Positions 3,896 through 62,655 of a stretch of DNA of 64,000 nt are shown here, piece by piece. A model generated the notes under the pieces. The model saw only the letters and a list, made by a program, of their open reading frames with translations. It was not told the DNA's origin and made no database searches. Both the position numbers and the translations under genes were made by a program. The stretch's first letter is position 1. The number at the start of each line of letters is the position of its first letter. The stretch is from Octopus sinensis (lineage: Eukaryota): positions 40,300,001 to 40,364,000 of the forward strand of contig NC_043003.1 in NCBI RefSeq assembly GCF_006345805.1, written 5' to 3'.

Positions 3896-6468
3896 AAGAA
3901 TACGGACGGGGTTGTTTGAGAATATTAAATATCCAGAAAAGGATAGAAAGAAAATTTCAGAGCAGAAATGAACGACATAACGGTGATATTTCAAGAAAGA
4001 CAGAACGGTTAAGGTCAAGATTAGTGAACCATGTCTATGCGATCATATTAGTATACAATCAGTTGAGCTCGAACACAAACCGTGTTAGATATCTAATTCA
4101 AAATCAATATAATCATAAATAATCGAAATCAATAACGAATATGATATAATGGGGAAGAAATTGACTATATTTTGTTTGATGAAGTTAAAATGAGGTTGTT
4201 AAAATTGAAATAATTGATAAAAATGAGTAATAATATAGATAAAATTGAATAATGAATTAGATAGTATTTGAAAAATATATGAATAATCAAAACGTGATTA
4301 AACATACAGGCAATGTGAGCATGAACATGTCCAGTCCATGTGCAGAACCGAATTATTGTAAAATATTCCTTTAGTGAGGCTGCTGGAATTGGTTAAAAGG
4401 AGCGAGAAAATAAGACATCATAAGTGAGATTCTTATATAAGATCAGAAATAATATTCATATGTCAGAGTAAATATGAATAATTTTAAACAATGTTGAAGG
4501 AAATAGAGATAAAGTTTCCTTCTGAATCATATAAACTCGTGGGACCGGTTTCCCGGTTTCTCTGGCGCGTATATATTCCCCACCTGGACGGGACGCCTGC
4601 CCATCGTAGGTTTACTCATTTTTGCCAATTGAGCGGAATGAAGCAATATGAAATGAAGTATTTACAGCCTTTACCTCTGTTACTGTTGCCTACAATTTCA
4701 CACCAGCAAAAACGAAGTCGGTCTATTCTGTACACCTTGAGAGCTACAAATTAACTATATTCAACCATTAAAAAAACTGTTCTATTTCGAATGAATATCT
4801 CACTATAAAATATGGCTAACTTCTGAAACCGGTTGAATATTTTCTGCTTCTTATGGTTTTCTGTTCAATATTTCTTATTTCTTATTTCTTATTTCAATTT
4901 CTTTAAACTAATTAACAATGACTTGATTCACTCACATTATCCTTTTTGCCTATTTCTGGGACTAGTATAATATTTTCTGCTTCTTACAGTTTTTCAGTCC
5001 AACATTTTCTTATTGCAATGATGCTAATGATAATTCGATCCACTCACATTATAATTTTTATCTATCCTGTTATTGTCAGATAAGTTTGGCGTGGGATTAG
5101 CATATTTAATGTATGAAGCATAGAAAACTAATTAGGAGAAAATATAATTTGAGAGAAAAATACTAGTGGATAATTAACATATTTACTGTTGTATTTCTAC
5201 AAGTGATAGTTTTATACAGGAAAGTATGGTATCTGAATAATTTGTGAAAGCGTTATAGCTTGAATCACTTTGGAAATACAGAAGCAGTGTATTTAGTCCT
5301 GTGAAAAAGTAGAGCTGCTTAATTTATATTTTCAGATACCGGCTACATTTATACAATAGGTATGTGAGTACCAATGCATAAACATAGTGGAATACATAGA
5401 CACATAAACACACACATACACACACACGAATGTTGCAGTTTGTAAACAAAAAAAGAGAGTCCTCATTATAAGCTGCTGAGTATATCCATAAATTAACTGA
5501 ATTCTTTCTTCTCGCCTCAAATTTCACGCCAATGCGATCTTCCAGTCCTAGTTTTTTTTCGATATTTGAAGCTGGTTGGTTTTATATACATGAAATCAAT
5601 GTATTCTCCTATGTACAGCTATCATTTTGACTGTATAAATTCTAAATATTATTTTAACAAGATGCTGTGTTTCTGTTTTTGCTCTGTTGTTGCAATTTAT
5701 TAGCTAATCTAGAGTGCTTTCGATATAATTTCCATTTCCTCTTGATTGCCATTTGTGATCATTGCTTAATTTGTGCCTTCTTGATAATTGGCGTGTTGTC
5801 ACTTTTCATTGACCAATTCAACGGTTGGTTTGTCCCTGTCGACTTCATTATTACATCCGGTTTCACCAAAATTGTTAGTCTTTATTGCATTAGATGTCGT
5901 CAAATTGTTATTCTGTATTAACTCTATAAGACGTTTGATGTTAGAATTAATTATGTTACTCTTTTGTGCTATGTCCGTTATTTTCTAAATTGACTATGTA
6001 GAGGTTCTGCCAGTGATTATAGTATCTGGTATCTCTTATTTGATATTCTTATCAGTTCGTGAATTTGTTAGTCACTTTGTTCCGTTATAGTCAGCATTAG
6101 CCCCCCTTCACTGCAGTTTCCAAATAATCGGATATTTTGCAAACGGACCAGTTTTTAAAAATGAATTTTTTCCGCTGACTTGCAAAGTTATCATCTAATT
6201 TATTCGGCTGAAGAAGCATATTTGAAACAAAATGATGTTACACTTTTCTGAAGTGCACAGGTGGCATGTTTGGAATCATTTATATAATATATGCACTTGC
6301 TATACTTACTTATTCTATATTTATATACCTCTTCTTCAGGTTCTAAGTATGCTTCAAGAAAGATGCTCTGTATCTTCCGTATTTATAGCAGAATACATAC
6401 ATGCATGCATGCATACATACATACATACATACATACATACATACATACATACATACATACATACATAC

Positions 6469-6890
6469 CTCGTTGTGTGGGACTACAAAGAAAAGATATG
6501 TTCTTTTGTGGAAGTCAGCTGTTCCCAAGACATGAATGTGATTAGAAAAATACAAGAGAAAGAGGACATCTAAGAACAATTGATAGAGTTTGCAGATCCA
6601 GTATAGTACTCAAGATACACATTCAGCATCATACCCATTATTACTGGAGCACCAGGATACATACCAAGCCGTCTGGAGCAAAGTATGGTTGAACTTGAGA
6701 TCTTGGAGAGGGAATGCAAATCCTTAATTCATATCGTGCAAATGATCACGATATCTGGGACTGTAAAAATCTGCAAGACTTTCTCAAGATTTAAAGATAA
6801 CGGTTAGAACAGGATACTTTCCATCACAACCTTGATACCAAGTCGATGGCCGGTCAGAATTTAGCCTAAATTAAAAAGAATGAGAGAAGA
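6469..6890 (+). mobile_element. Non-LTR retrotransposon 3' fragment, restriction-like endonuclease (RLE) domain, R4/R2-group, pseudogenised
   Basis: Translates LVVWDYKEKICSFVEVSCSQDMNVIRKIQEKEDI*...FSIIPIITGAPGYIPSRL...ITISGTVKICKTF, an RLE C-terminus pattern; 5'-truncated against (TACA)n. Confidence 0.75.
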
Positions 6891-6919
6891 CATACGTAAT
6901 ACATAAATGTGTATGTGTG

Positions 6920-7100
6920 AAGGCGCATAATCTAGTGGTTAGGGTGATGCGCTTACGATCCCAAGATCATGGTATCGATTCCTAGATTAGCGGTGTGTTG
7001 TGTTTTTGAGCAAAACACTTCATTTCACATTGTTCCAGTTCACTCAACTATAAACAGGTGACCCTGCGATGGACTGGAAATTTGTCCGGGGGGAACGTTG
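6920..7100 (+). mobile_element. tRNA-derived SINE (family D)
   Basis: A/B-box-like head (tctagtggttag...ggtatcgattcc), gagcaaaacacttcatttcac core, ccctgcgatggactgg tail; related pieces at ~4530-4670 (-) and ~39000-39190 (-). Confidence 0.7.
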
Positions 7101-7138
7101 GCTTGCTCATTTGGAACCTGCAAGCCTTTGGAAATATT

Positions 7139-7329
7139 AGTACGCCGGGCGAAAAGCTTAGCGCTATTTCGTCTGTCTTTATGTTCTGAGTTCAAATTCC
7201 ACCGAGTTCGACTTTTCCTTTCATCCTTTCGGGGTCGATAAATTACGTACCAGTTGCGTACAGGAGTCGACCGAATGGACTGGCCTCCTCCCCCAAAATT
7301 GCCGGCCTTTTGCCTAGAGTAGAAAAAAA
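7139..7329 (+). mobile_element. SINE family B (Nin/Deu-like core tttcatcctttcggggtcgataaa)
   Basis: ttctgagttcaaattccaccgag...ggggtcgataaattacgtaccagtt...gcctagagtagaaaaaa, followed by (TTC)n. Confidence 0.9.
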
Positions 7330-7330
7330 T

Positions 7331-7459
7331 CTTCTTCTTCTTCTTCTTCTTCTTCTTCTTCTTCTTCTTCTTCTTCTTCTTCTTCTTCTTCTTCTTCTTC
7401 TTCTTCTTCTTCTTCTTCTTCTTCTTCTTCTTCTTCTTCTTCTTCTTCTTCTTCTTCTT
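7331..7459. repeat. (TTC)n microsatellite
   Basis: Direct reading; source of the poly-R ORF. Confidence 0.98.
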
Positions 7460-7756
7460 GAACTTTGACTTTCATTGTTATCTGGTATCAACTTTCATGT
7501 GTACACTCTCCATTATTTTTCTTTATAGATTCTCTTCTGATCTACTCTGAATAACCTATTCTGGTGGTAACCCTTCATTCTTTGGTCGTATCTTACCATC
7601 TTTGCTTTCTTTGCAACAAGGCGCTGTTTCAGTTCCTCCATTACTACTTCAGGCCTTTTCTTTCAATATTATACTTCTTTTTCAGCGCCCTGTATTTTGT
7701 TTCACTTTGAAACTCCCCTTTCTCTTTTCGGTCTAACACAGAGATTTCCTTCGAGA
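7460..7756 (-). mobile_element. R4/Dong-type retrotransposon fragment, region upstream of the RT domain
   Basis: Minus strand, with frameshifts: ...[39 protein letters not shown]..., matching the EELKQR/QNRLF-DQK motif of R4/Dong ORFs. Confidence 0.7.
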
Positions 7757-8110
7757 GCTTTCACTTCATTACCGAGCGCAGCTCTGTGTGCTTTGGGTAT
7801 GTGCTGTGGTTTGTTGTGATGCTCTAATGGTTACTGTATTGAAAGTGTTTTGCGTAGGATGTGTGCAGTGCCCAGTAGTGCAATTTTCTGTATGTTATAT
7901 ATATTTGTAAGTCCTGGTGTTTTTGTTATGTATTTGTCTGAAATTTTTTTTTATCATACTTAATGCGCCTACTATGATAGGAATTGTTTCTGTTTTTAGA
8001 TTCCACATTCGAGTTACCTCTATTTCCAGGTTTTTGTATTTTGAAAGTTTCTCCATTTCTTTTAGAGACACGTTGTCATCTGCTGGTATTGATACATCAA
8101 TTAGAAAGCA
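7757..8110 (-). mobile_element. R4/Dong-type retrotransposon 3' fragment (RLE C-terminus + 3'UTR)
   Basis: CFLIDVSIPADDNVSLKEMEKLSKYKNLEIEVTRMWNLKTETIPIIVGAL...(frameshift) KYITKTPGLTNIYNIQKIALLGTAHILRKTLSIQ*. Confidence 0.9.
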
Positions 8111-8143
8111 TCATCATCATCATCATCATTATTATTATTATTA

Positions 8144-8178
<35 letters not shown>

Positions 8179-8186
8179 TATTATTA

Positions 8187-8218
<32 letters not shown>

Positions 8219-8239
8219 TTATCATTATATTATTATCAT

Positions 8240-8995
8240 TATTATCATTCATATACACACAACAGGTTAGACTGTTGGAAAAGAAAAATTCCTAACATCG
8301 GGCAACAAGTAACCTTAGATGCCAAGAACCATCTTAAGTATCCTAGCTGTCCCTAATAACACTGTTTTCTGGAGCTATACTAAACTGGGTTTCCTCTATT
8401 CATCTGTTCAGATCTTTAGGGATAGTTCCCAATGCACCTATAACTACTGAGATACATTTTACCCGTACTTTCCATAGTTTCTGTAATTCAATGGCTAGAA
8501 CCTAGTCCTTTGCTATTTTTTCTATACCTCTCACATTGATTTCCTTTCTGCAGCCATGATACTGCCCATGTATTTACAGCCTCCACTAGATTCGAACCAT
8601 TTACCTTTCACTTCATTAGTTTTCTCACTCTACTCATGTACTCCTTCTCAATTTTCGTTTACATTTCTATAGTTAGTACGCTGTCAGATTTTAATATTCC
8701 TAAATACCTAAAACTCTCTCCTCGTTTCAATGATTTAAATGTCTGACCATCTGGTAATTGGATGCCTTCGCTGTTGACTACCTGTCCCTTTCTCATGACT
8801 AACATTGCATACTTATCTATGCCAAATTCCATGCCTATATCTATGCTAAAGAGTCTTATAGTCTACATTAAGGAATCTGTCTCTTTTTCATCCTGACTAA
8901 AAAACATCAGATCATCCATGTAGAGCAAATGGTTACTATTTCTGAACTGATACCTTGCCTTTGACTTCCTTAATACCAAACTGAGGGGGAATCAA
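8240..8995 (-). mobile_element. Internally deleted R4/Dong-type element (RT core joined directly to RLE end), with (AAT)n tail
   Basis: NHLLYMDDLMFFSQ...FSIDIGMEFGIDKYAMLVMRKG...FRYLGIL...AVNTWAVS, then near 8550 jumps to IEKIAKD*VLAIELQKLWKVRVKCISVVIGALGTIPKDL; several stops. Confidence 0.85.
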
Positions 8996-9005
8996 ACATA
9001 AGACC

Positions 9006-9215
9006 AATATTCTTTTCTACTCTAGGCACAAGGCCCGAAATCTTTAGGGAGGAGGCCAGTCGACCCTAGTACGCAACTGGTACTTAATTTATCGACACCG
9101 AAAGGATGAAAGGCAGAGTCGACCTCGGTGGAATTTGAGCTCAGAACGTAAAGACAGACGAAATACTACTAAGCATTTCGTCTGGCGTGCTAACTTATCT
9201 GCCAGCATCTCGCCT
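9006..9215 (-). mobile_element. SINE family B
   Basis: Reverse complement of the family B consensus including the ctactctaggcacaaggcccg tail. Confidence 0.9.
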
Positions 9216-9430
9216 GCAAAGACAAAAATTAAAGGTGACTACGAGTCCACCTGGAAAATTCCTCTTTTGATATCAACTTTTCCTAAGAGTGTGTTACCTG
9301 AGTAGAGATCGATTTTCCATTTCTTCAAGTTAAAGTTATGTTGTCTGTTATACCGAATATACTCAGGCATTCATTTATCCATGAGTGTGAGATCATGTCA
9401 TGAGTGTGGTATTAATATTATTATTATTAT

Positions 9431-10636
9431 GATGTTTTTTCCTTCTTTCTTCAAATTTTCTTCCGTTTCTCGCTGAGTGTTTTCCATACACCTAGGGCAG
9501 AGAAGGGCATTGCATACATTCCCAGATTACACGCGCAAATTCACAGATAAAATATGTATTTAAAAATTAATAAATAAATAAATTCATGGATGGATGTTAT
9601 TTTCACAGCGATAGTGCTCTTCTCAGTACATGAGCCGTTCCAGTTAATACGATTTTTTGCACTTCCTGTAGGGATGGTAAGCCTGGAATAATTTTCAAAT
9701 AGGTTTCAGTACCTTTTTTTATCATTCCTAGAGATCCTACAATCACTGGTACTGTAGTCGCCTTGAGATCCCACATTTTTTCAATTTCTATTAGCAGGTC
9801 TTTATATTTACCAATCTTGTCAAATTCTTTCGCCGCTATATTGTGATCACAGGGAATACTCATGTCAATTAATAAACACATCCTTTTTGTCTGATCTTTT
9901 ATAATAATATCCGGTATATTAGCTTTTATAGTCCTGTCGGTCTGCACGGGGAAGTCCCATAGAATCGACACATTTTCTCCCTCAGTCACAGCTTCAGGAT
10001 GATGTTTATGCCATTTGTCGGCGGTTTTGATTTTATAATGCCGACATATTGTCCAATGTAAATACTGGCTGACTCTGTCATGTCTTGCTTTATATTCTGC
10101 AGGTGCTAAGACTCTATACCCTGAGATTAGGTGGTCTATTGTTTCAATCTCATCGTTACAGAATAGGCATTTTGGGTCAGCTCCATTTTTCATCACATAG
10201 GCTTGGTAGTTCCGGGTTAATAAGCTTTGGTCTTGAGCAGCTAATATGAAACCTTCACTCTCTGCTTTTAGCCCTGAGCTTCGTAACCAGTGGTGCGTGT
10301 GTTTCTGGTCGACATCAGCTTGTTTGCTACGGGCCACATACTTGCTATGGAGAGGTTTCTGTTCCCATCTTCTAGCTAAATTTTCATGTGCTTTTGTCTT
10401 TGCAATTAATTTTCTTTTCTTTGCAGCTGCAGTTGGCGCATTTCTTTCAGCCTGCTCAATCTGGTGGGTATCTAAGAGATCAGCAGCGAGTGTTTTTGCT
10501 CTCTTTGAGAATAGAGTGAAGTTTTTTAGGTCTTTCATGTTTTTCAACAAGTTTTAGCATCCAATCGTTGGTTGCTTCAAGGTATTTGGCCAGTCCGATT
10601 GTGGTGGTTTTGTATGTAAGTTCAAGCTGGATCAAT
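9431..10636 (-). mobile_element. 5'-truncated R4/Dong-type non-LTR retrotransposon (post-RT region, zinc knuckle, RLE, 3'UTR)
   Basis: Contains ORF 9603-10550; upstream frame LIQLELTYKTTTIGLAKYLEATNDWMLKLVEKHE joins by a frameshift near 10490; 3'UTR ends at cat/aat repeats near 9430. Confidence 0.92.
9603..10550 (-). pseudogene. Retrotransposon ORF remnant: C-x2-C-x8-H-x4-(C>Y) knuckle, RHD motif, PD..D..E..K restriction-like endonuclease
   Basis: KPLHSKY, LKAESEGFILAAQDQSLLTRNY, CLFCNDEIETIDHLISGY, RHDRVSQYLHW, PDIIIKD...LIDMSIP...KEFDKIGKY, VPVIVGSLG, GTAHVLRRAL. RT absent; start is an artefact of a frameshift. Confidence 0.9.
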
Positions 10637-10797
10637 CATCATCATCATCATCATCATCACCATCACATCACCATCACCATCACTATCACCACCAGCATCA
10701 GCATCACCACCACCACTACCACCACCATCACCATCACCATCACCATCATCATCACCACCACCATCACCACCACCACCACCATCACCATCACCACCAC

Positions 10798-10835
<38 letters not shown>

Positions 10836-10845
10836 CCATCATCAC

Positions 10846-10881
<36 letters not shown>

Positions 10882-10891
10882 TATTATTATT
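10637..10891. repeat. (CAT)n/(CAC)n/(TAT)n compound microsatellite
   Basis: Direct reading. Confidence 0.95.
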
Positions 10892-10902
10892 AATTATTAT
10901 AC

Positions 10903-11120
10903 TGGTAACGAGCTGGTAGAATTGTTAGTATGCTGGATAAGATGTGTAGCGGCATTTCGTTCATCTATACGCTCTGACTTCAAATTCCGCCGAGGCCGAC
11001 TTCGCCTTTTATCCTTCAGGAGTTGATAAAATAGGGACCAGTTGAACACTGGGATATGCCTAATCAACTAACCCCTTCCTCCGAAACTACTGGCCTTGTG
11101 CCAAAATGTGAAATCTTTTA
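10903..11120 (+). mobile_element. SINE family B
   Basis: gagctggtagaattgttag...caaattccgccgaggccgact...ggccttgtgccaaaatgtgaaa. Confidence 0.85.
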
Positions 11121-34571: not shown

Positions 34572-34965
34572 ATCTTTTCTACTCTAGGCACAAGGACCGG
34601 AACTTTTGGGGAGTGTGGCCAGTCAATTAGATCGGCCCCGGTACACAACTAGTTCTTAATTTATCGACTCCGAAAGGATAAAAGGCAAAGTCGACCTCGG
34701 CGGAATTTCAACTCAGAACGTAAAAGCAGACGAAATACCTATTTCTTTAATACCCACAAGGAGCTAAACACAGAGAGGACAAAAAAGGACAGACAAACGG
34801 ATTAAGTCGACTATATCGACCCCAGTGCGTAACTGGTACTTATTTAATCGACCCCGAAAGAATGAAAGGCAAAGTCGACACCGGCGGAACTCGAACTCAG
34901 AACGCAGCGGCAGACGAAACACTGCAAAGCATTTCGCCCGGCGTGCTGACGTTCCTGCCATCTCA
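34572..34965 (-). mobile_element. SINE family B dimer
   Basis: Two cores joined at gacgaaatac|ctatttcttt. Confidence 0.9.
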
Positions 34966-35031
34966 CTGCCTTACGTAGGAATACATATTAACCGATATAT
35001 ATTATCCGTCCATTCTTTATAAAACAGGATG

Positions 35032-37627: not shown

Positions 37628-39866
37628 CTGTAACGTGAAGAAGAATCTGTACTGTTGAAGTTAATACAACCAACATCTGTCACGAGCTTGTCTTAACATA
37701 GTTAATAAAAACTGGTTTCGTCTGATTGTGATCCATAACTTATTGAGATAACTAGGGAACGGCGAGGAAGCACATGGCTCTTTGAAAAATCATTGTCACC
37801 GTACAAAACAATGGTGCCAGCGTCCTTTTTAGGCTCAACTAATATGTTTTTCAAGCGCACGTCCCTGTTTTCTTTTTTCTTACTAATATATAATCAGAGT
37901 GGATTCTTTGCGTTATTCGTTCTGGCCCTTTGTCTTCTGAGCTCAAATCGCGCTGTAGCCTATTTAGCGGGTAGACTTAATCCGTCACTCAGTTTAACAC
38001 TATCACCTGAGAACTTGGGTGCTTTTAGCAAAGTCCACCGAATTGCAAGGATTCTGGCTAGATCTTCGGTTTGAGGACACCTTTCTGTCTTCCTCGCATT
38101 AGTAAAAAGTGAAGGGAACTTTCTTGCTGAACAACCTACACAAATAATTTGTCGGAATTTTGTGGTTTTCGTCACTGTTTACAATTTTATTCCAATTGTT
38201 TTCAAATTTGGTATATGGATTAGGTTTTGTATACTAATTATGAAAATGAAATTAATTTTTCCTATAAATCCATTATTAAAAAGTTATTAGCCTTTAAAAT
38301 TTACAAAATTTGGGTATTTTAGTCAATCAGAAGCGAGTATGTTACACATCACCATGGCGAAGAACTCTGTTTCCATAGTAACCAAAGCAAAGAGGTACCA
38401 CGGGTTCCATAGCTGATTGCGAAGAACTCTGTTTTCATAGTAACCAAAGATGCTGCGCATACGCACAAGGAGTGCAGGAAACAAACGCCGGTGTGGAACA
38501 CATAGTTCCATGGTTGATTCTAATCTTTGTGAATTTATGTGGAGAAGGAGATACGAGAAAGACAATTTATTTTATAAAATCCTAGAGTGTATTGCAAACT
38601 TTCGTTCTTGAATTTTTTAAACTAATAAATGTCTGCTTTAAACTATGTTTTGACTGTTATTTCTAGTAACTCGTGTTGGATTGTTCGTAGCTTTTAATTA
38701 TTTAATTTACTCGCATATGTTTTCATGTTTTTCACTCTTTACTGTAACATGCCGATGTCACCTGCCCCTGATGATGGAAGAGGCAGCGAACGCGCTGTTT
38801 TCTGATTGGCTGAAAATTCTGAAAATTATTCAATTTTGAACACATGTAAAACTTTTGCAAAATTTTTCTGGAATAAAAAACAAATTCGAATTCAGCATCA
38901 AAAATTACATCTATATGATACATTAAAGAATTCTTTTAAAGAATTTTTAAGCAGTGACGAAAACCACAAAGATCCAATTTGTATATAGTGATCAAATGTA
39001 TGTGCTGTATTAAGTCACATGCTCCATCAAATCGAAAAGGTGCACAGAGTACCACATGTCAGGTGTTGAAGTGATGGTAGAGCAACGTGAGATGAAGTGT
39101 TTTGCTCAAGAACACAATGTACTACCCAGACCAGGAATTGAAAACCCGATCTCACATGCAACGCCTAAACCACTAAGCTATGCACCGTCGCACCAACAGC
39201 ATATAATACATACAGGAATAATCCAAATAACATAAAGCATTACCGTATTTGATGGTAAAATGTCTCAGAATGTCTCAAAAAATCTCTCTAGTGATTTATG
39301 CGAAGTTACTTTAAATATTACATAATTCCACCTCCTACTCCAAATATGTGATGATGAAATTGTGGTTCGTCTTTTATGCCCGCATGTCTTCTGCTCCACC
39401 CAATGCAGTGTTTTATTTAGACTTAGCCAAAATTATCTTTAAAGAAAGAATGTTTCATTATCCTTGATATTTCATTAAGCACTCACTATTACCGAGTTCT
39501 TTAAAAGTTAATATAATTTAAGTCACAAGTTGAAAGACGAAAATAAATTTAACGCATGAATAATCGGCTTACATCACATTCTATTTCCTTGTTAGGAATT
39601 ATCGTTGGGTTTAATAAAATTATATTTCATTGTTACACACATACACAGCCATAAATATACATAACCTGTGACAAATATATGCGTACATCGCGCGCAATTT
39701 TGTCTGTTTTCACGCATCTTTGTTAACAGCAAACCAGCCGTATTTTCGCATTTCCCTAATATATTTATTGTGTATAAGTTTAGCATTAGTATGACATTTT
39801 TTTGTAAAGATTGTTATCTTGTCAATGGATAAATCCATTTAGTTTCTCGATTGGTTTCCCAACTGC

Positions 39867-40664: not shown

Positions 40665-41055
40665 TGGTTTCAAATTTTGCCACAAGGGTAGCAACATTTT
40701 TTTTGGTAGGGATGAGTCGATTACATCGACCCTGTGTTCAACAGGTACTTATTTCATCGACCCTCGAAAGGATGAAAAGTAAAGTTGACCTCGGCGGAAA
40801 TTGAACTCAGAACGTTGCGACGGGCGAAATAGCTATTTCTTTACTACTCACAAGGGGCTAAACACAGAGAGGACAAACAAGGACAGACAAACGGATTAAG
40901 TCGATTATATCGACCCCAGTGCATAATTGGTACTTATTTAATCGACCCCGAAAGGATGAAAGGCAAAGTCGACCTCAGTGGAATTTGAACTCAAGCGAAA
41001 TACCGCTAAGCATTTCGCCCGGCGTGCTAACGTTTCTGCCAGCTCGCCGCCTTAG
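40665..41055 (-). mobile_element. SINE family B dimer
   Basis: Same junction as 34572-34965 (gcgaaatag|ctatttctttactac). Confidence 0.88.
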
Positions 41056-46339: not shown

Positions 46340-46905
46340 ATCTTTTGTACTCTAGGCACAAAGCCCGAAAATTTGGGGGATGAAGCCAGTGGATTATATC
46401 GACCCTAGTGCGTAACTGGTACTTATTTAATCGACCCCTAAAGGATGAAAGGCAAAGTCGACCTCGGCTGAATTTGAACTCAGAATGTAAAGACAGACGA
46501 AATACCTATTTCTTTACTACCCACAAGGGGCTAAACACAGAGAGGACAAAGAAGGACAAACAAACGGATTAAGTCGATTACATCGACCTCAGTGCGTAAC
46601 TGGTACTTAATTTATCGATCCCGAAATGATGAAAAGTAAAGTCGACCTCGGCGGAATTTGAACTCAGAACTTAGCGGTAGACGAAATACCTATTTCTTTA
46701 CTACCCACAAGGGGCTAAACACAGAGGGGACCAAACGAGGACAGATTATATCGACCCCAGTGCGTAACTGATACTTATTTAATCGACCCCGAAAGGATGA
46801 AAAAGCAAAGTCGACCTCGGCGGAATTTGAACTCAGAACGTAGCTACAGACGAAATACTGCTGAGCATTTCGCCCGGCGTGCTAACGTTTCTGCCAACTC
46901 GTCGT
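46340..46905 (-). mobile_element. SINE family B trimer
   Basis: Three cores; junction gacgaaatacctatttctttactacccacaagggg at ~46497 and ~46681. Confidence 0.92.
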
Positions 46906-47277
46906 CTTTGAGAAGGGAAATACTGACTCTTTCCTGTTTAGTATTATTGGTAGCATTGCCAAAGCAGCGAGCTGGCAGAATTATTAGCACGCCGAACAAA
47001 ATGCTTAGTGGTATTAAATCCGTCTTCATGTTCTGAGCTTAGATTCCTCGTTTCGGAGTTGATGAAATAAATACCAGATCACTGGATCGCTGTAATTGAT
47101 TAGCCCCCTCCCTCCCTCCAAATTTCAAGTCTCCAAAATTCAAGAAAGAATTATTGATAGCATTGTTAATAGTGTAGGAAGGCATGTAGACGATAGTATA
47201 GGTGATGACGTACGTGGTGGTACAGTTGACTAATAGTGCAGGCCATGGAAGAAGTAGTTGTTTGGAGAGATGATAAT

Positions 47278-59365: not shown

Positions 59366-59994
59366 TCTATTCTATTCTATTCTATTTTGTCTATATTTTT
59401 CAGCAAATCCGGTTACAGACTGCTATTTTGCAAGAGACAAAACATGTTACATTATGGAAATACATCAACGCACTGGAAAATTGAATAACTGCAGTTCAAA
59501 TCTGAGACTTTCGTTGTGTAGAATAGAGATAAGTTACCGGCGTCCACTGTACGTTTTCGACCCTTAACCAATACTTTTTCTGTTAGTTCTCTTCACCTGC
59601 ATCGCAAATACTTTTAGGAAAGAAACGAACATCACAAAATTACATTTACCCACCACAAGAAAAACGGGTACATGCAAGTCACAGTGTTTCTTTCTATTTT
59701 GAAACCCAAGTTCCCAGAAACTGTGCTGGGTTTAGGGTGTCTTCAGTGAGAGTGACGCCATGCCAACACGTATCTTTGAATACCTTAGACTCAATTTAAA
59801 CGGCTGCTGGAGATTCTGACAAATCGACTTTTGTCAGGGATCCTCAACCAACGCAATGCCGCCTAATCGAAGAATTAGCCAGCCTTAACAGACGCTAGTA
59901 GATCCCTCAAAGATATGAAGAAAAATATCCAAATATACAAAAGATCAAGAAATGGAAAAATAGCCAGAATACGGCGGCTGAAGGTAAACAATTC

Positions 59995-61925
59995 GGTTAA
60001 TATAGGGCGTAACAAATATCAGAAAATCAAAAAAAAAATGTGTGTAATAGGTGTAAAACAACTTCCTATGAACGAATATGAAAAAAAAAATTCGCGCACG
60101 CGAAAGGGGGGTGGGGGAGAGGCCTCGGAAAATTCACATCGGGAAGTTCCGAAAGCGTCTGAGAGGCTGACCCGGGCACCAAAACAAAAAAAAAATAGTG
60201 TAATATGTGTAAAACAACTTGCTCTAAACGAATATGACAAAAAAAAAATGCGCTCTCGCGAAAGAGGAGTGGGGGAGAGGCCTCGGAATATTTATATCGG
60301 GAATTTCCGAAAGCGTCTGAACCGGGCACAAAAACAAAAACAAAAACAGCGTAATAGGTGTAAAACAACTTGCTAAAACGACTATCATGAAAAAATGCGC
60401 GCTCGCGAAAGGGGGGTGGGGGAGAGGCTTCGGAAATTTCCCATCTTCAGTCCACGGCCTTTAAACTAAGAAAAAATAGTGTAATTGGTGTAAAACTACT
60501 TGTTCTAAACGAGTATCAAGAACACACACTCACACATGAATCATAAACTCCGTATTCGCAAAAAAAAAAAAAATAATAAAGAGAAGAAATTCTGGAAAAA
60601 GTGAAGAAATGTTGGATCTCATTCCTTGGTTAAAGCTATTTTAACATTAAATTATGCTTTTCTTTGAAATAGTTCAGATATATGCAATTCTTCTCACTTA
60701 TTAAGATGCATTTATCAGAAAAAAAGAGACAGAAAAAATTATTATTTTGTGTCAATCCTTCCCTAATTATCCTTTATTAATTAGTTTTGGCGTGTATTTT
60801 TTTCCCAAATTTATTTTTTCACCTTTACAACACTATTTAGTAAAGCAATTAATTATCTTTATAATTTGCATATTTGACTTATTAATCAAAATTCTCTAGA
60901 TGTAATATATACTAAGTAATGCATCCTTCATTTATGTGTTCCGTTCTGTATTATGCATGCGTGACTGTTTGTATGTAAGTGTGTTTAACTGTGCACATGA
61001 ATGTGAATATTAAAGAACGTATTTATTTACTATGATTGTTATTTTCAGAACAAATAAATCTTTTGGCTGTTATGTTATTGATGTTATTATTATTGCTAGT
61101 TAAAGGGTGGTGACTTGGCTGAATATTTTGAGTCTTGTAGTATGTAGTTGTGTTAGTCAATATTCTGAGTTCAAATCCAACTCATTTCTTTATCATCATT
61201 ATCGATGGACCACTCAAAGAGGTATGTATACATTATCATTTTCGTAACATAATTTCTGTAGTATTTCAAGATGTTTCTGACACGTATTTTGATTCACATG
61301 GCGGAGATCCAACATTTCTTCACTTTTTCCAGAATTTCTTCTCTTTATTTATTTTTTTTGCGAAATACGAAGTTTATGATTCATGTGTGAGTGTGTGTTC
61401 TTGATACTCGTTTAGAACAAGTAGTTTTACACCAATTACACTATTTTTTCTTAGTTTAAAGGCCGTGGACTGAAGATGGGAAATTTCCGAAGCCTCTCCC
61501 CCACCCCCCTTTCGCGAGCGCGCATTTTTTTCATGATAGTCGTTTAGAGCAAGTTGTTTTACACCTATTACGCTGTTTTTGTTTTTGTTTTTGTGCCCGG
61601 TTCAGACGCTTTCGGAAATTCCCGATATAAAATATCCGAGGCCTCTCCCCCACCCCTCTTTCTCGAGAGCGCATTTTTCTTTTCATATTCGTTTAGAGCA
61701 AGTGTTTTACACATATTACACTATTTTTTTTTTTGTTTTGGTGCCCGGGTCAGCCCCTCAGACGCTTTCGGAACTTCCCGATGTGAATTTTCCGAGGCCT
61801 CTCCCCCACCCCCCTTTCGCGTGCGCGAATTTTTTTTTTCATATTCGTTCATAGGAAGTTGTTTTACACCTATTACACACATTTTTTTTTTGATTTTCTG
61901 ATATTTGTTACGCCCTATATTAACC
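59995..61925. mobile_element. Foldback-like non-autonomous DNA transposon, 1,931 bp, ~625-bp TIRs, 8-bp TSD (Merlin- or MULE/FB-like)
   Basis: TIR ggttaatatagggcgtaac (59995-60620 / 61304-61925); TSD aacaattc at 59987-59994 and 61926-61933; arms built of ~150-bp subrepeats; no transposase seen. Confidence 0.9.
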
Positions 61926-61933
61926 AACAATTC

Positions 61934-62170
61934 TTATTTCTTTATTGCCCACAAGGGGCTAAACACTGAGAGGACAAACAAGGACAGACAAAGGGATTAA
62001 GTCGATTACATCGACCCCAGTGCATAACTGGTACTTAATTTATCGACCCCGAAAGGATGAAAGGTAAAGTCGACCTCGGCGGAATTTGAACTCAGAACGT
62101 AACGGCAGACGAAATACCGCAAAGCATTTCGTCCGTCGTGCTAACGTTTCTGCCAGCTCGCCGCCTTTGA
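61934..62170 (-). mobile_element. SINE family B, low divergence
   Basis: ttatttctttattgcccacaaggggctaaac...ctgccagctcgccgcctt. Confidence 0.92.
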
Positions 62171-62359
62171 AGGAAAGCAATTCTTGTAATAAGAAAGCCG
62201 GAGGGAATAATTAAAAAAAGACAAGCAGATAAAAACGTAACAAAAATCACAGGCCTAATACACACCATACATAAAATAGTTTGAACACAAGAAGGTACTG
62301 CATTTCATCAACTGTTGGTTATGTATTAAAATCACATATTGAAAATAGGACAACTGAAA

Positions 62360-62655
62360 TACTACTACTACTACTACAACTTTTTCATTGGCCCCCTTCG
62401 GTCGGAACTGACCAAGAGTAGTATCCTTGCAGTTTTCAGCTCGGCTGGAACTGCGTCTCCGATGGCTAAACAGACCTGTATGTGAGTAACAGTCTCTGTT
62501 ACATATCACACATTTGAATAAGGTGTTGTGAGTTTGTCGAAGTAACTGCGCTCCTTTTGCCGGTCTCACTTGTCTGCTGCTGTGCTCATTAACCATCCCC
62601 CCCCCCGACTTGAGGTGTTCATTCAGGCTGCTCTTCCATGTTGGCCAGTCAGCTG
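62360..62655 (-). mobile_element. RTE (BovB-like) LINE 3' fragment with (TAG)n tail
   Basis: ADWPTWKSSLNEHLKSG...FKCVICNRDCYSHTGLFSHRRR, then ggtcagttccgaccgaagggggcc and (gta)n. Confidence 0.8.

What the first reader, a model, noticed from the sequence alone, without database searches (positions are those of the whole stretch)
59995..61925. Foldback-like transposon: 625-bp modular TIRs, GG termini, exact 8-bp TSD
Seen: the arms are roughly 96-97% identical by eye and cover about 65% of the element. Each is built from ~3.3 diverged ~150-bp subrepeats (tgtaa.a.gtgtaaaacaactt...gcgaaaggggggtgggggagaggcctcggaa), and subrepeat-specific variants match between arms, so these are true TIRs. The TSD aacaattc is exact and there is no transposase. 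Established: 5'-GG termini with 8-9 bp TSDs fit Merlin; long TIRs with internal tandem repeats fit Foldback/MULE-type elements. Inference: a recently mobile non-autonomous family that I do not recognise from cephalopods, with iterated transposase-binding sites.
Basis: partly seen in the sequence, partly recalled or inferred. Interest (0 to 1): 0.75.

Follow-up and report, generated by a model that had tools for sequence, protein, structure and literature searches.

The report
Octopus foldback-type non-autonomous DNA transposon
This is an ordinary, gene-less "cut-and-paste" jumping-gene relic in an octopus genome, with unusually long mirrored ends built from repeated 150-bp blocks; the enzyme family that moved it could not be identified.

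Summary
Window 59995-61925 is a 1931-bp element with terminal inverted repeats of 626 and 622 nt. The arms match in 610 of 631 aligned columns, and the outer 169 nt are perfect. Each arm holds four ~130-157-bp subrepeats. The element starts 5'-GG and is flanked by an exact 8-bp duplication, AACAATTC (chance about 3e-5). It has no transposase: no Pfam domain in any ORF and no Merlin-HMM signal.

The window is Octopus DNA, because its SINE matches O. sinensis copies at 89-91%.

I call it a non-autonomous, foldback-type TIR DNA transposon (class-level confidence about 0.95). The superfamily is unresolved:
- **Merlin (~0.45).** GG ends plus an 8-bp duplication fit. Octopus Merlins fetched here show the same signature, with 350-bp TIRs and one 710-bp foldback-like derivative.
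- **Mutator/Foldback (~0.3).** This is the main rival.

Its first 11 nt match none of the four Merlin terminus types I could sample.

I found no second copy in about 156 kb of Octopus DNA, which is too small a sample to judge. "Recently mobile family" is therefore untested, and Dfam and Repbase could not be queried. It is a new member of a known kind and of low interest.

The parts
59987..59994 (.). Left copy of the 8-bp target-site duplication, AACAATTC
   Evidence: Read directly. It is an exact match to 61926-61933. Chance is 2.7e-5.
59995..60620 (+). Left terminal inverted repeat (626 nt), starting 5'-GGTTAATATAGGGCG
   Evidence: It is 96.7% identical to the reverse complement of the right arm, and the first 169 nt are perfect.
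59995..60029 (+). Unique terminal domain (~35 nt) outside the subrepeat array. This is the presumed primary transposase recognition and cleavage end (inferred).
   Evidence: Its similarity to the subrepeats is not significant.
60030..60185 (+). Subrepeat L1 (156 nt)
   Evidence: 99% identical to R1, and 82% and 71% to L2 and L3.
60186..60336 (+). Subrepeat L2 (151 nt)
   Evidence: 95% identical to R2.
60337..60466 (+). Subrepeat L3 (130 nt, truncated at its 3' end)
   Evidence: 98% identical to R3.
60467..60620 (+). Subrepeat L4, in which only the head motif is conserved, plus the inner TIR domain
   Evidence: (family D4) and 51: 92% identical to R4, and 51-57% to L1-L3.
60621..61303 (.). Non-repeated, AT-rich middle domain (683 nt, GC 0.28) with no coding capacity
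   Evidence: There is no ORF longer than 84 aa, no Pfam hit, a Merlin HMM score of at most 5.8 bits and no other copy in the window.
61304..61925 (-). Right terminal inverted repeat (622 nt) with subrepeats R4 to R1, ending ...CGCCCTATATTAACC
61926..61933 (.). Right copy of the 8-bp target-site duplication, AACAATTC
61929..62180 (+). Octopus SINE copy at whose 5' edge the element sits. It is the host of the insertion, not part of the element.
   Evidence: Searches show many copies in the window at 75-92% identity. One search shows copies in O. sinensis and O. bimaculoides loci.

Best explanation
This is a non-autonomous, foldback-type class II (cut-and-paste) DNA transposon of Octopus, most likely mobilised in trans by a Merlin (IS1595-like DDE) transposase.

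Proposed mechanism:
1. The transposase binds the GG-ended termini, and probably also motifs repeated once per ~150-bp subrepeat in each arm.
2. It excises the 1.9-kb unit.
3. It inserts the unit at a target cut with an 8-bp stagger.
4. Repair of the stagger produced the AACAATTC duplication.

Shown here: the TIRs, the subrepeat architecture, the GG termini, the 8-bp TSD and the lack of any coding capacity.

Inferred: transposition as the origin, the identity of the transposase, and the subrepeats as extra binding sites.

The 1.1% substitution divergence between the arms would put the insertion at no more than about 1-2 My. This assumes that the arms were identical at insertion, that no gene conversion followed, and that JC 0.09 equals 25 My (the calibration in PMC13282606).

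The confidence of 0.45 is for the Merlin assignment. The class-level call, a TSD-flanked non-autonomous TIR DNA transposon, stands at about 0.95.
For: Structure. The exact 8-bp TSD has a chance probability of 2.7e-5.

Merlin signature in the literature: conserved 5'-GG, 8-9-bp TSDs and TIRs up to 462 bp. O. bimaculoides carries the most Merlin transposase hits among Bilateria, 191 (PMC8101967).

Merlin copies inspected here:
- An 8.7-kb Merlin in O. sinensis and O. vulgaris (L001-L003) has GGCGATG.../GGCATAG... termini, ~350-bp TIRs and three different 8-bp TSDs. The copies are 98-99.6% identical.
- In O. bimaculoides (L004) a 710-bp foldback-like element at 5575-6284 has GGATCTTTGGG termini and the 8-bp TSD TAACGTTG. 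One of its arms is homologous to the 3' end of an adjacent Merlin copy. Octopus Merlins therefore do give rise to long-armed non-autonomous derivatives.
- Two non-octopus Merlin families also show GG termini. One of them (L007-L009) also shows 8-bp TSDs.
- A Merlin transposase relic lies in the window itself, at 38477-38605.
Against: - There is no transposase remnant in the element. The Merlin HMM scores at most 5.8 bits, and Pfam finds nothing.
- The first 11 nt, GGTTAATATAG, match none of the four Merlin terminus types sampled: GGCGATGTTTC, GGATCTTTGGG, GGTACTTCTTC and GGTACTTCTAC. The Repbase rule for placing non-autonomous elements (PMC4455052) is therefore not met.
- The 626-nt arms exceed the reported Merlin maximum of 462 bp. 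None of the Merlin TIRs I saw carries ~150-bp subrepeats.
- In O. vulgaris, Mutator is richer than Merlin: 55 families against 18 overall, and 21 against 2 among recently active families (PMC13282606).
- No second copy of the element was found.
Confidence: 0.45

Rival explanations
1. The same kind of element (a non-autonomous foldback-type TIR transposon), but mobilised by a Mutator-like (MULE/Foldback) transposase.
For: - Long TIRs built of tandem subrepeats are the hallmark of foldback elements, most of which have been assigned to Mutator.
- Drosophila Tetris has ~220-bp repeats inside its TIRs, no ORF and 8-10-bp TSDs, and was placed in Mutator on that basis (PMC4079207).
- O. vulgaris has 55 Mutator families (13.9 Mb), of which 21 are recently active. 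Merlin has 18 families, of which 2 are recently active (PMC13282606).
Against: - The TSD here is 8 bp, whereas 9-10 bp is usual for Mutator and Foldback (my knowledge; Tetris spans 8-10).
- A conserved 5'-GG is the diagnostic end of Merlin.
- The foldback shape is known to arise independently in several superfamilies (PMC4079207), so it does not point to MULE specifically.
Confidence: 0.3
2. The same kind of element, but belonging to another superfamily that makes 8-bp duplications (hAT, P/Galileo-like, Zisupton, Novosib) or to a still unclassified one.
For: - hAT makes 8-bp TSDs and is family-rich in O. vulgaris (134 families). A further 123 TIR families there are unclassified.
- Galileo (P superfamily) shows that very long TIRs with tandem repeats carrying extra transposase-binding sites also arise outside Mutator (PMC4079207).
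Against: - hAT termini (YARNG), short hAT TIRs and the hAT target consensus (nTnnnnAn or nnnTAnnn) do not fit GGTTA... with AACAATTC. These hAT features are from my knowledge and were not tested here.
- Galileo makes 7-bp TSDs (my knowledge).
- P, Zisupton and Novosib do not appear in the parts of the O. vulgaris superfamily table returned. I did not read the whole table.
Confidence: 0.2
3. It is not a transposon. It is a local palindromic (inverted) duplication produced by replication or repair, with a fortuitous 8-bp flank match.
For: Only one copy is known. None was found in the rest of the window or in about 92 kb of other Octopus DNA.
Against: - The inverted repeat stops exactly at the GG/CC ends.
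- It is bracketed by an exact 8-bp direct repeat, with chance 2.7e-5.
- The same end-plus-duplication signature is seen in bona fide Octopus Merlin insertions.
- About 156 kb is far too small a sample of a ~2.8-Gb genome to call the element single-copy.
Confidence: 0.03

Closest known systems
Merlin superfamily elements and their non-autonomous derivatives. Examples here are the Octopus Merlin in L001-L003 and the 710-bp derivative at L004 5575-6284.
   Same: 5'-GG termini, an 8-bp TSD and long TIRs (350 bp in the Octopus autonomous copy). A foldback-like non-autonomous derivative exists in the same genus (PMC8101967).
   Different: - There is no sequence similarity to any sampled Merlin terminus or TIR.
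- The arms are 626 nt, longer than the reported Merlin maximum of 462.
- ~150-bp subrepeats were not seen in the sampled Merlin TIRs.
Tetris (Drosophila virilis foldback element; PMC4079207)
   Same: It is non-autonomous and has a middle domain without an ORF. Its long TIRs contain internal tandem repeats of a few hundred bp (220 bp there, about 150 bp here). Its TSDs are 8-9 bp in complete copies.
   Different: - The host phylum is different and no sequence is shared.
- Tetris has a long non-repeated flanking domain (up to 866 bp) outside the repeats, where this element has only about 35 nt.
- Tetris is tentatively placed in Mutator.
Galileo (Drosophila buzzatii; P superfamily) and the classical Drosophila FB elements
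   Same: Both have a foldback architecture. In Galileo the tandem repeats inside the TIRs carry extra transposase (THAP) binding sites, as cited in PMC4079207. That is the model for the proposed role of the subrepeats here.
   Different: Galileo makes 7-bp TSDs and FB makes 9-bp TSDs (my knowledge), against 8 bp here. The termini differ, and the transposase link is unknown for this element.
Sea-urchin TU elements (modular foldback transposons)
   Same: From my knowledge only: long, modular inverted terminal repeats with tandem subrepeats in a marine invertebrate, reportedly with 8-bp duplications.
   Different: This was not checked here because the paper was not retrievable. TU subrepeats are much shorter (about 15 bp).

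Membership tests
TIR (class II, cut-and-paste) DNA transposon, non-autonomous | Terminal inverted repeats ending at sharp boundaries | tested here: met
   arms of 626 and 622 nt, 96.7% identical, with the outer 169 nt perfect.
TIR (class II, cut-and-paste) DNA transposon, non-autonomous | Target-site duplication of fixed length directly abutting the TIRs | tested here: met
   AACAATTC lies on both sides, and chance is 2.7e-5.
TIR (class II, cut-and-paste) DNA transposon, non-autonomous | Several copies at unrelated sites with different TSDs, or an empty site | tested here: inconclusive
   There is no further copy in the window, in about 92 kb of Octopus loci or in JGI metagenomes, and no hit for a translated TIR ORF. 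The octopus assemblies could not be searched by DNA. The paralogous SINE comparison gave no clean empty site.
Merlin | 8- or 9-bp TSD | tested here: met
   The TSD here is 8 bp. The definition comes from PMC8101967.
Merlin | Conserved 5'-GG termini | tested here: met
   The ends are GGTTAAT... and ...ATTAACC.
Merlin | DDE_Tnp_IS1595 transposase, or a remnant of it, inside the element | tested here: not met
   A Merlin HMM built from 120 proteins scores at most 5.8 bits on the six-frame translation. Pfam finds nothing. This is expected for a non-autonomous element, so it does not exclude mobilisation by Merlin.
Merlin | Terminal positions 1-11 align (at most 1 mismatch) with a classified Merlin of the same TSD length. 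This is the Repbase rule (PMC4455052). | tested here: inconclusive
   The rule is not met against the four Merlin terminus types I could sample. O. vulgaris alone has 18 Merlin families, most of them unsampled.
Merlin | TIR length within the reported range of 24-462 bp | tested here: not met
   The arms are 626 and 622 nt. The range comes from PMC8101967.
Foldback / Mutator-like (MULE) | Very long TIRs composed largely of tandem subrepeats, with a short non-coding middle domain | tested here: met
   The arms are 65% of the element, and each has four subrepeats.
Foldback / Mutator-like (MULE) | TSD of 9-10 bp (8-10 in Tetris) | tested here: inconclusive
   A single insertion with 8 bp sits at the lower edge of the range (PMC4079207).
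Foldback / Mutator-like (MULE) | A MULE transposase in autonomous relatives | not testable with these tools
hAT | 8-bp TSD | tested here: met
hAT | Short TIRs with YARNG termini (my knowledge) | tested here: not met
   The termini are GGTTA and the TIRs are 626 nt.

The most novel reading that the evidence does not exclude
The element is a Merlin derivative and therefore the first foldback-type Merlin. Its arms (626 nt, four ~150-bp subrepeats) are longer than any reported for the superfamily. That would show that the foldback architecture, already known from the Mutator and P superfamilies, also evolved in Merlin, in the animal lineage with the largest known Merlin load.
Probability: 0.35. 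Interest if true: 0.35.

Novelty: new member of a known kind. Interest (0 to 1): 0.2.

Why it matters
Little beyond repeat annotation.
- It adds one well-delimited long-TIR family seed to the poorly curated TIR fraction of Octopus genomes. O. vulgaris has 123 unclassified TIR families (PMC13282606).
- If it proves to be a multi-copy Merlin derivative, it would extend the known structural range of that superfamily.
- Long perfect palindromes like this one are also potential sites of assembly error, hairpin formation and ectopic recombination. Galileo and the Tetris relative DAIBAM are linked to inversions (PMC4079207).

Tried and rejected
1. Other copies in the window. BLASTN of the whole element and a search for the terminal 30-mer with up to 3 mismatches found only the two arms.
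2. Other copies in JGI metagenome contigs. Two subrepeat patterns gave 0 hits.
3. Pulling copies out of the protein collection. A search with one of the ORFs that read through the TIR found nothing.
4. Locating the window, or orthologous loci, through window ORFs 62255-62596(-) and 9603-10550(-). Neither is on record.
5. Sampling more Octopus DNA through relatives of the window's retroelement ORF. No hit named as Octopus appeared among the 120 listed, so that search was unproductive.
6. Looking for the autonomous partner among Merlin loci. None of L001-L005 (Octopus) or L006-L014 (other organisms) shares sequence with the element.
7. A paralogous empty site from other SINE copies. The element sits at the SINE's 5' edge and the left flank aligns only ambiguously, so I did not use this as evidence.
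8. A Merlin remnant in the middle domain. Weak tblastn hits recurred at element positions 761-811, but the HMM scores were at noise level, so I rejected this.
9. The terminus as a diverged subrepeat. The alignment score is no better than shuffles (p = 0.48).
10. tRNA or Rfam content of the region. There is none.
11. A published description. No open-access paper holds 'octopus', 'foldback' and 'transposon' together. The one held supplement of the O. vulgaris repeat paper does not contain the element's sequence motifs.

Full report
**Observation**

Window 59995-61925 is a 1931-bp unit whose two ends are inverted copies of each other.
- A global alignment of 59995-60620 with the reverse complement of 61304-61925 gives 610 identical columns of 631 (96.7%). 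There are 7 substitutions and 9 gap events, nearly all in homopolymer A runs. The outer 169 nt are identical.
- Beyond position 626 the identity falls to background.
- The arms make up 64.6% of the unit.
- Tandem Repeats Finder reports a 156-158-bp period with 2.7-2.8 copies in each arm.
- The head motif GTAATnnGTGTAAAAC occurs four times per arm, at matching positions.
- Cognate subrepeats on the two arms are 99, 95, 98 and 92% identical. Non-cognate pairs are 51-83% identical.
- The unit begins GGTTAATATAG and ends CTATATTAACC.
- It is bracketed by AACAATTC at 59987-59994 and 61926-61933. The repeat cannot be extended to 9 bp. Its chance probability at these fixed positions is 2.7e-5 given the window's composition.

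**Coding capacity**

- The 683-bp middle domain is AT-rich (GC 0.28, against 0.39 in the arms) and has no ORF above 84 aa.
- The longer ORFs (up to 153 aa) lie mostly inside the arms and are read-through of the subrepeats.
- None of the element's ORFs reaches a Pfam threshold.
- The 115-aa ORF that reads through the right arm has no relative among 5.8 billion proteins.
- The element is therefore non-autonomous.

**Host and surroundings**

- The window is microsatellite-rich eukaryotic DNA with no Rfam hit.
- The element's right flank is a SINE with many copies in the window. The same SINE occurs at 89-91% identity in an O. sinensis locus, and more distantly in O. bimaculoides and O. vulgaris loci. 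The window is therefore Octopus or a very close relative.
- The element sits at the 5' edge of that SINE. I could not build a clean paralogous empty site from other SINE copies, because these are in tandem arrays and the left flank aligns only ambiguously.

**Search for further copies**

- There are none in the rest of the window.
- There are none in JGI metagenome contigs, searched with two subrepeat patterns.
- There are none in about 92 kb of Octopus DNA fetched around Merlin genes.
- The octopus assemblies are in the protein-indexed collection but cannot be searched by DNA.
- About 156 kb of a ~2.8-Gb genome says nothing about copy number. 'Family' and 'recently mobile' remain untested.

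**Which transposase?**

TSD length and terminal nucleotides are the accepted clues for non-autonomous elements (PMC4455052).

*The case for Merlin from the literature.* Merlin is defined by conserved 5'-GG ends, 8-9-bp TSDs and TIRs of 24-462 bp. O. bimaculoides has the largest Merlin transposase count among Bilateria, 191 (PMC8101967).

*Octopus Merlin copies fetched here.* I took one O. bimaculoides Merlin protein from that paper's supplement, found relatives and fetched their loci.
- In O. sinensis and O. vulgaris, one 8.7-kb Merlin occurs at three sites at 98-99.6% identity.
  - Its ends are GGCGATGTTTCG... and GGCATAGTTTCG....
  - Its TIRs are about 350 bp.
  - Its three 8-bp TSDs differ: GCAAATCT, CAAGGCTT and GAAACTTT.
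- In O. bimaculoides, a 710-bp foldback-like element (L004 5575-6284) lies next to a second Merlin copy.
  - It has GGATCTTTGGG ends and the 8-bp TSD TAACGTTG.
  - One of its arms is homologous to the 3' end of that Merlin copy.
- Two non-octopus Merlin families also start with GG (GGTACTTCTTC and GGTACTTCTAC). One of them also shows 8-bp TSDs.
- The signature of the element under study is therefore exactly that of Merlin in this genus. Octopus Merlins also demonstrably produce long-armed non-autonomous derivatives.

*The case against committing to Merlin.*
- The element shares no sequence with any of these Merlins.
- Its first 11 nt fail the Repbase terminal rule against all four terminus types sampled.
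- A Merlin HMM finds nothing in its six-frame translation (at most 5.8 bits).
- Its arms exceed the reported Merlin maximum.
- The curated O. vulgaris repeat annotation lists more Mutator than Merlin: 55 families against 18 overall, and 21 against 2 among recently active families. It also lists 134 hAT and 123 unclassified TIR families (PMC13282606).
- The closest structural analogue in the literature is Drosophila Tetris. It has TIRs with ~220-bp internal repeats, no ORF and 8-10-bp TSDs, and was provisionally placed in Mutator. The same paper stresses that the foldback shape arises independently in different superfamilies, with Galileo in P as an example (PMC4079207).
- hAT fits only the TSD length.

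*Weighing.* I put Merlin at about 0.45, Mutator/Foldback at about 0.3, other or unclassified superfamilies at about 0.2, and a non-transposon palindrome at about 0.03.

**Mechanism**

Shown: sharp GG/CC ends, long inverted arms and an 8-bp duplication.

Inferred:
- A DDE transposase supplied in trans bound the ends, excised the unit and integrated it at an 8-bp staggered cut.
- The subrepeats act as additional transposase-binding modules, as shown for the tandem repeats in Galileo's TIRs (cited in PMC4079207).
- The blocks conserved in all four subrepeats of both arms are GTAAT, GTGTAAAAC, ACTT and AACGA. A G-rich block, GCGAAAGGGGGGTGGGGGAGAGGC, is conserved with two or three substitutions in subrepeats 1-3 but not in subrepeat 4. 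These are the natural candidates for binding sites.
- A test of whether the 35-nt terminus is itself a diverged subrepeat was negative (p = 0.48).

Age: the 1.1% substitution divergence between the arms would correspond to roughly 1-2 My. This uses the octopus calibration of JC 0.09 for 25 My (PMC13282606). It assumes that the arms were identical at insertion and were not homogenised afterwards, which is an assumption and not a result.

**Novelty and verdict**

- No open-access paper combines 'octopus', 'foldback' and 'transposon'.
- The held supplement of the O. vulgaris repeat paper does not contain the element's motifs.
- Dfam, Repbase and that paper's library itself could not be queried.
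- Structurally this is a new member of a well-known kind: a non-autonomous foldback-type TIR element.
- Interest is low. The only mildly novel reading is that it is the first foldback-type Merlin.

Noticed in passing
window 38477-38605 (+), with a possible element end at 38975: There is a C-terminal relic of a Merlin (DDE_Tnp_IS1595-type) transposase here, scoring 20 bits at HMM positions 253-297 of 314. About 370 bp downstream the sequence ...CACAAAGATCC matches 10 of the 11 terminal nt of the O. bimaculoides Merlin-derived element in L004. No left end was found, so the copy is 5'-truncated. It has no similarity to the element under study.
   Followed up: partly
L001 4266-12985 (O. sinensis), also in L002 (O. 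vulgaris) and L003 (O. sinensis): This is an 8.7-kb Merlin element with ~350-bp TIRs ending in a TGTA microsatellite. It has a second, inner inverted repeat of 344 bp (4638-4981 and 9412-9755), 99% complementary, that does not enclose the transposase gene. The three insertions are 98-99.6% identical, with different 8-bp TSDs, which suggests very recent activity.
   Followed up: partly
L004 5575-6284 (O. bimaculoides): This is a 710-bp foldback-like non-autonomous element with GGATCTTTGGG termini, arms of about 250 nt and the TSD TAACGTTG. One arm is homologous to the 3' end (to 4602) of the neighbouring Merlin copy.
   Followed up: partly
L005 10779-11248 (O. sinensis): A ~470-bp insertion, relative to the homologous O. 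bimaculoides copy, interrupts a Merlin copy. It is about 90% identical to the TIR of the L001-type Merlin. It may be a solo TIR or a small derivative.
   Followed up: no
window 6000-11000, ORF 9603-10550 (-): A retroelement fragment with a weak zf-RVT match. Its best protein relatives, at 62-70% identity, are from shrimp, cnidarians and unlabelled assemblies. None of the 120 listed hits is named as Octopus.
   Followed up: partly
window 34621-34972, 40708-41053, 46388-46911: The SINE that flanks the element occurs here as head-to-tail dimers and trimers rather than as dispersed single copies.
   Followed up: no
window 61163-61178: The middle domain carries TTCTGAGTTCAAATCC, a near-exact match to the tRNA-like B-box region of the flanking SINE. 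ARAGORN finds no tRNA here, and BLAST finds no wider SINE homology.
   Followed up: partly
L006 5936-9196 (ENA ERZ26222911, not Octopus): Three identical-length 104-aa Merlin-domain ORFs lie at a 1473-bp spacing. A fragment of a Merlin element has been amplified as a tandem array.
   Followed up: no
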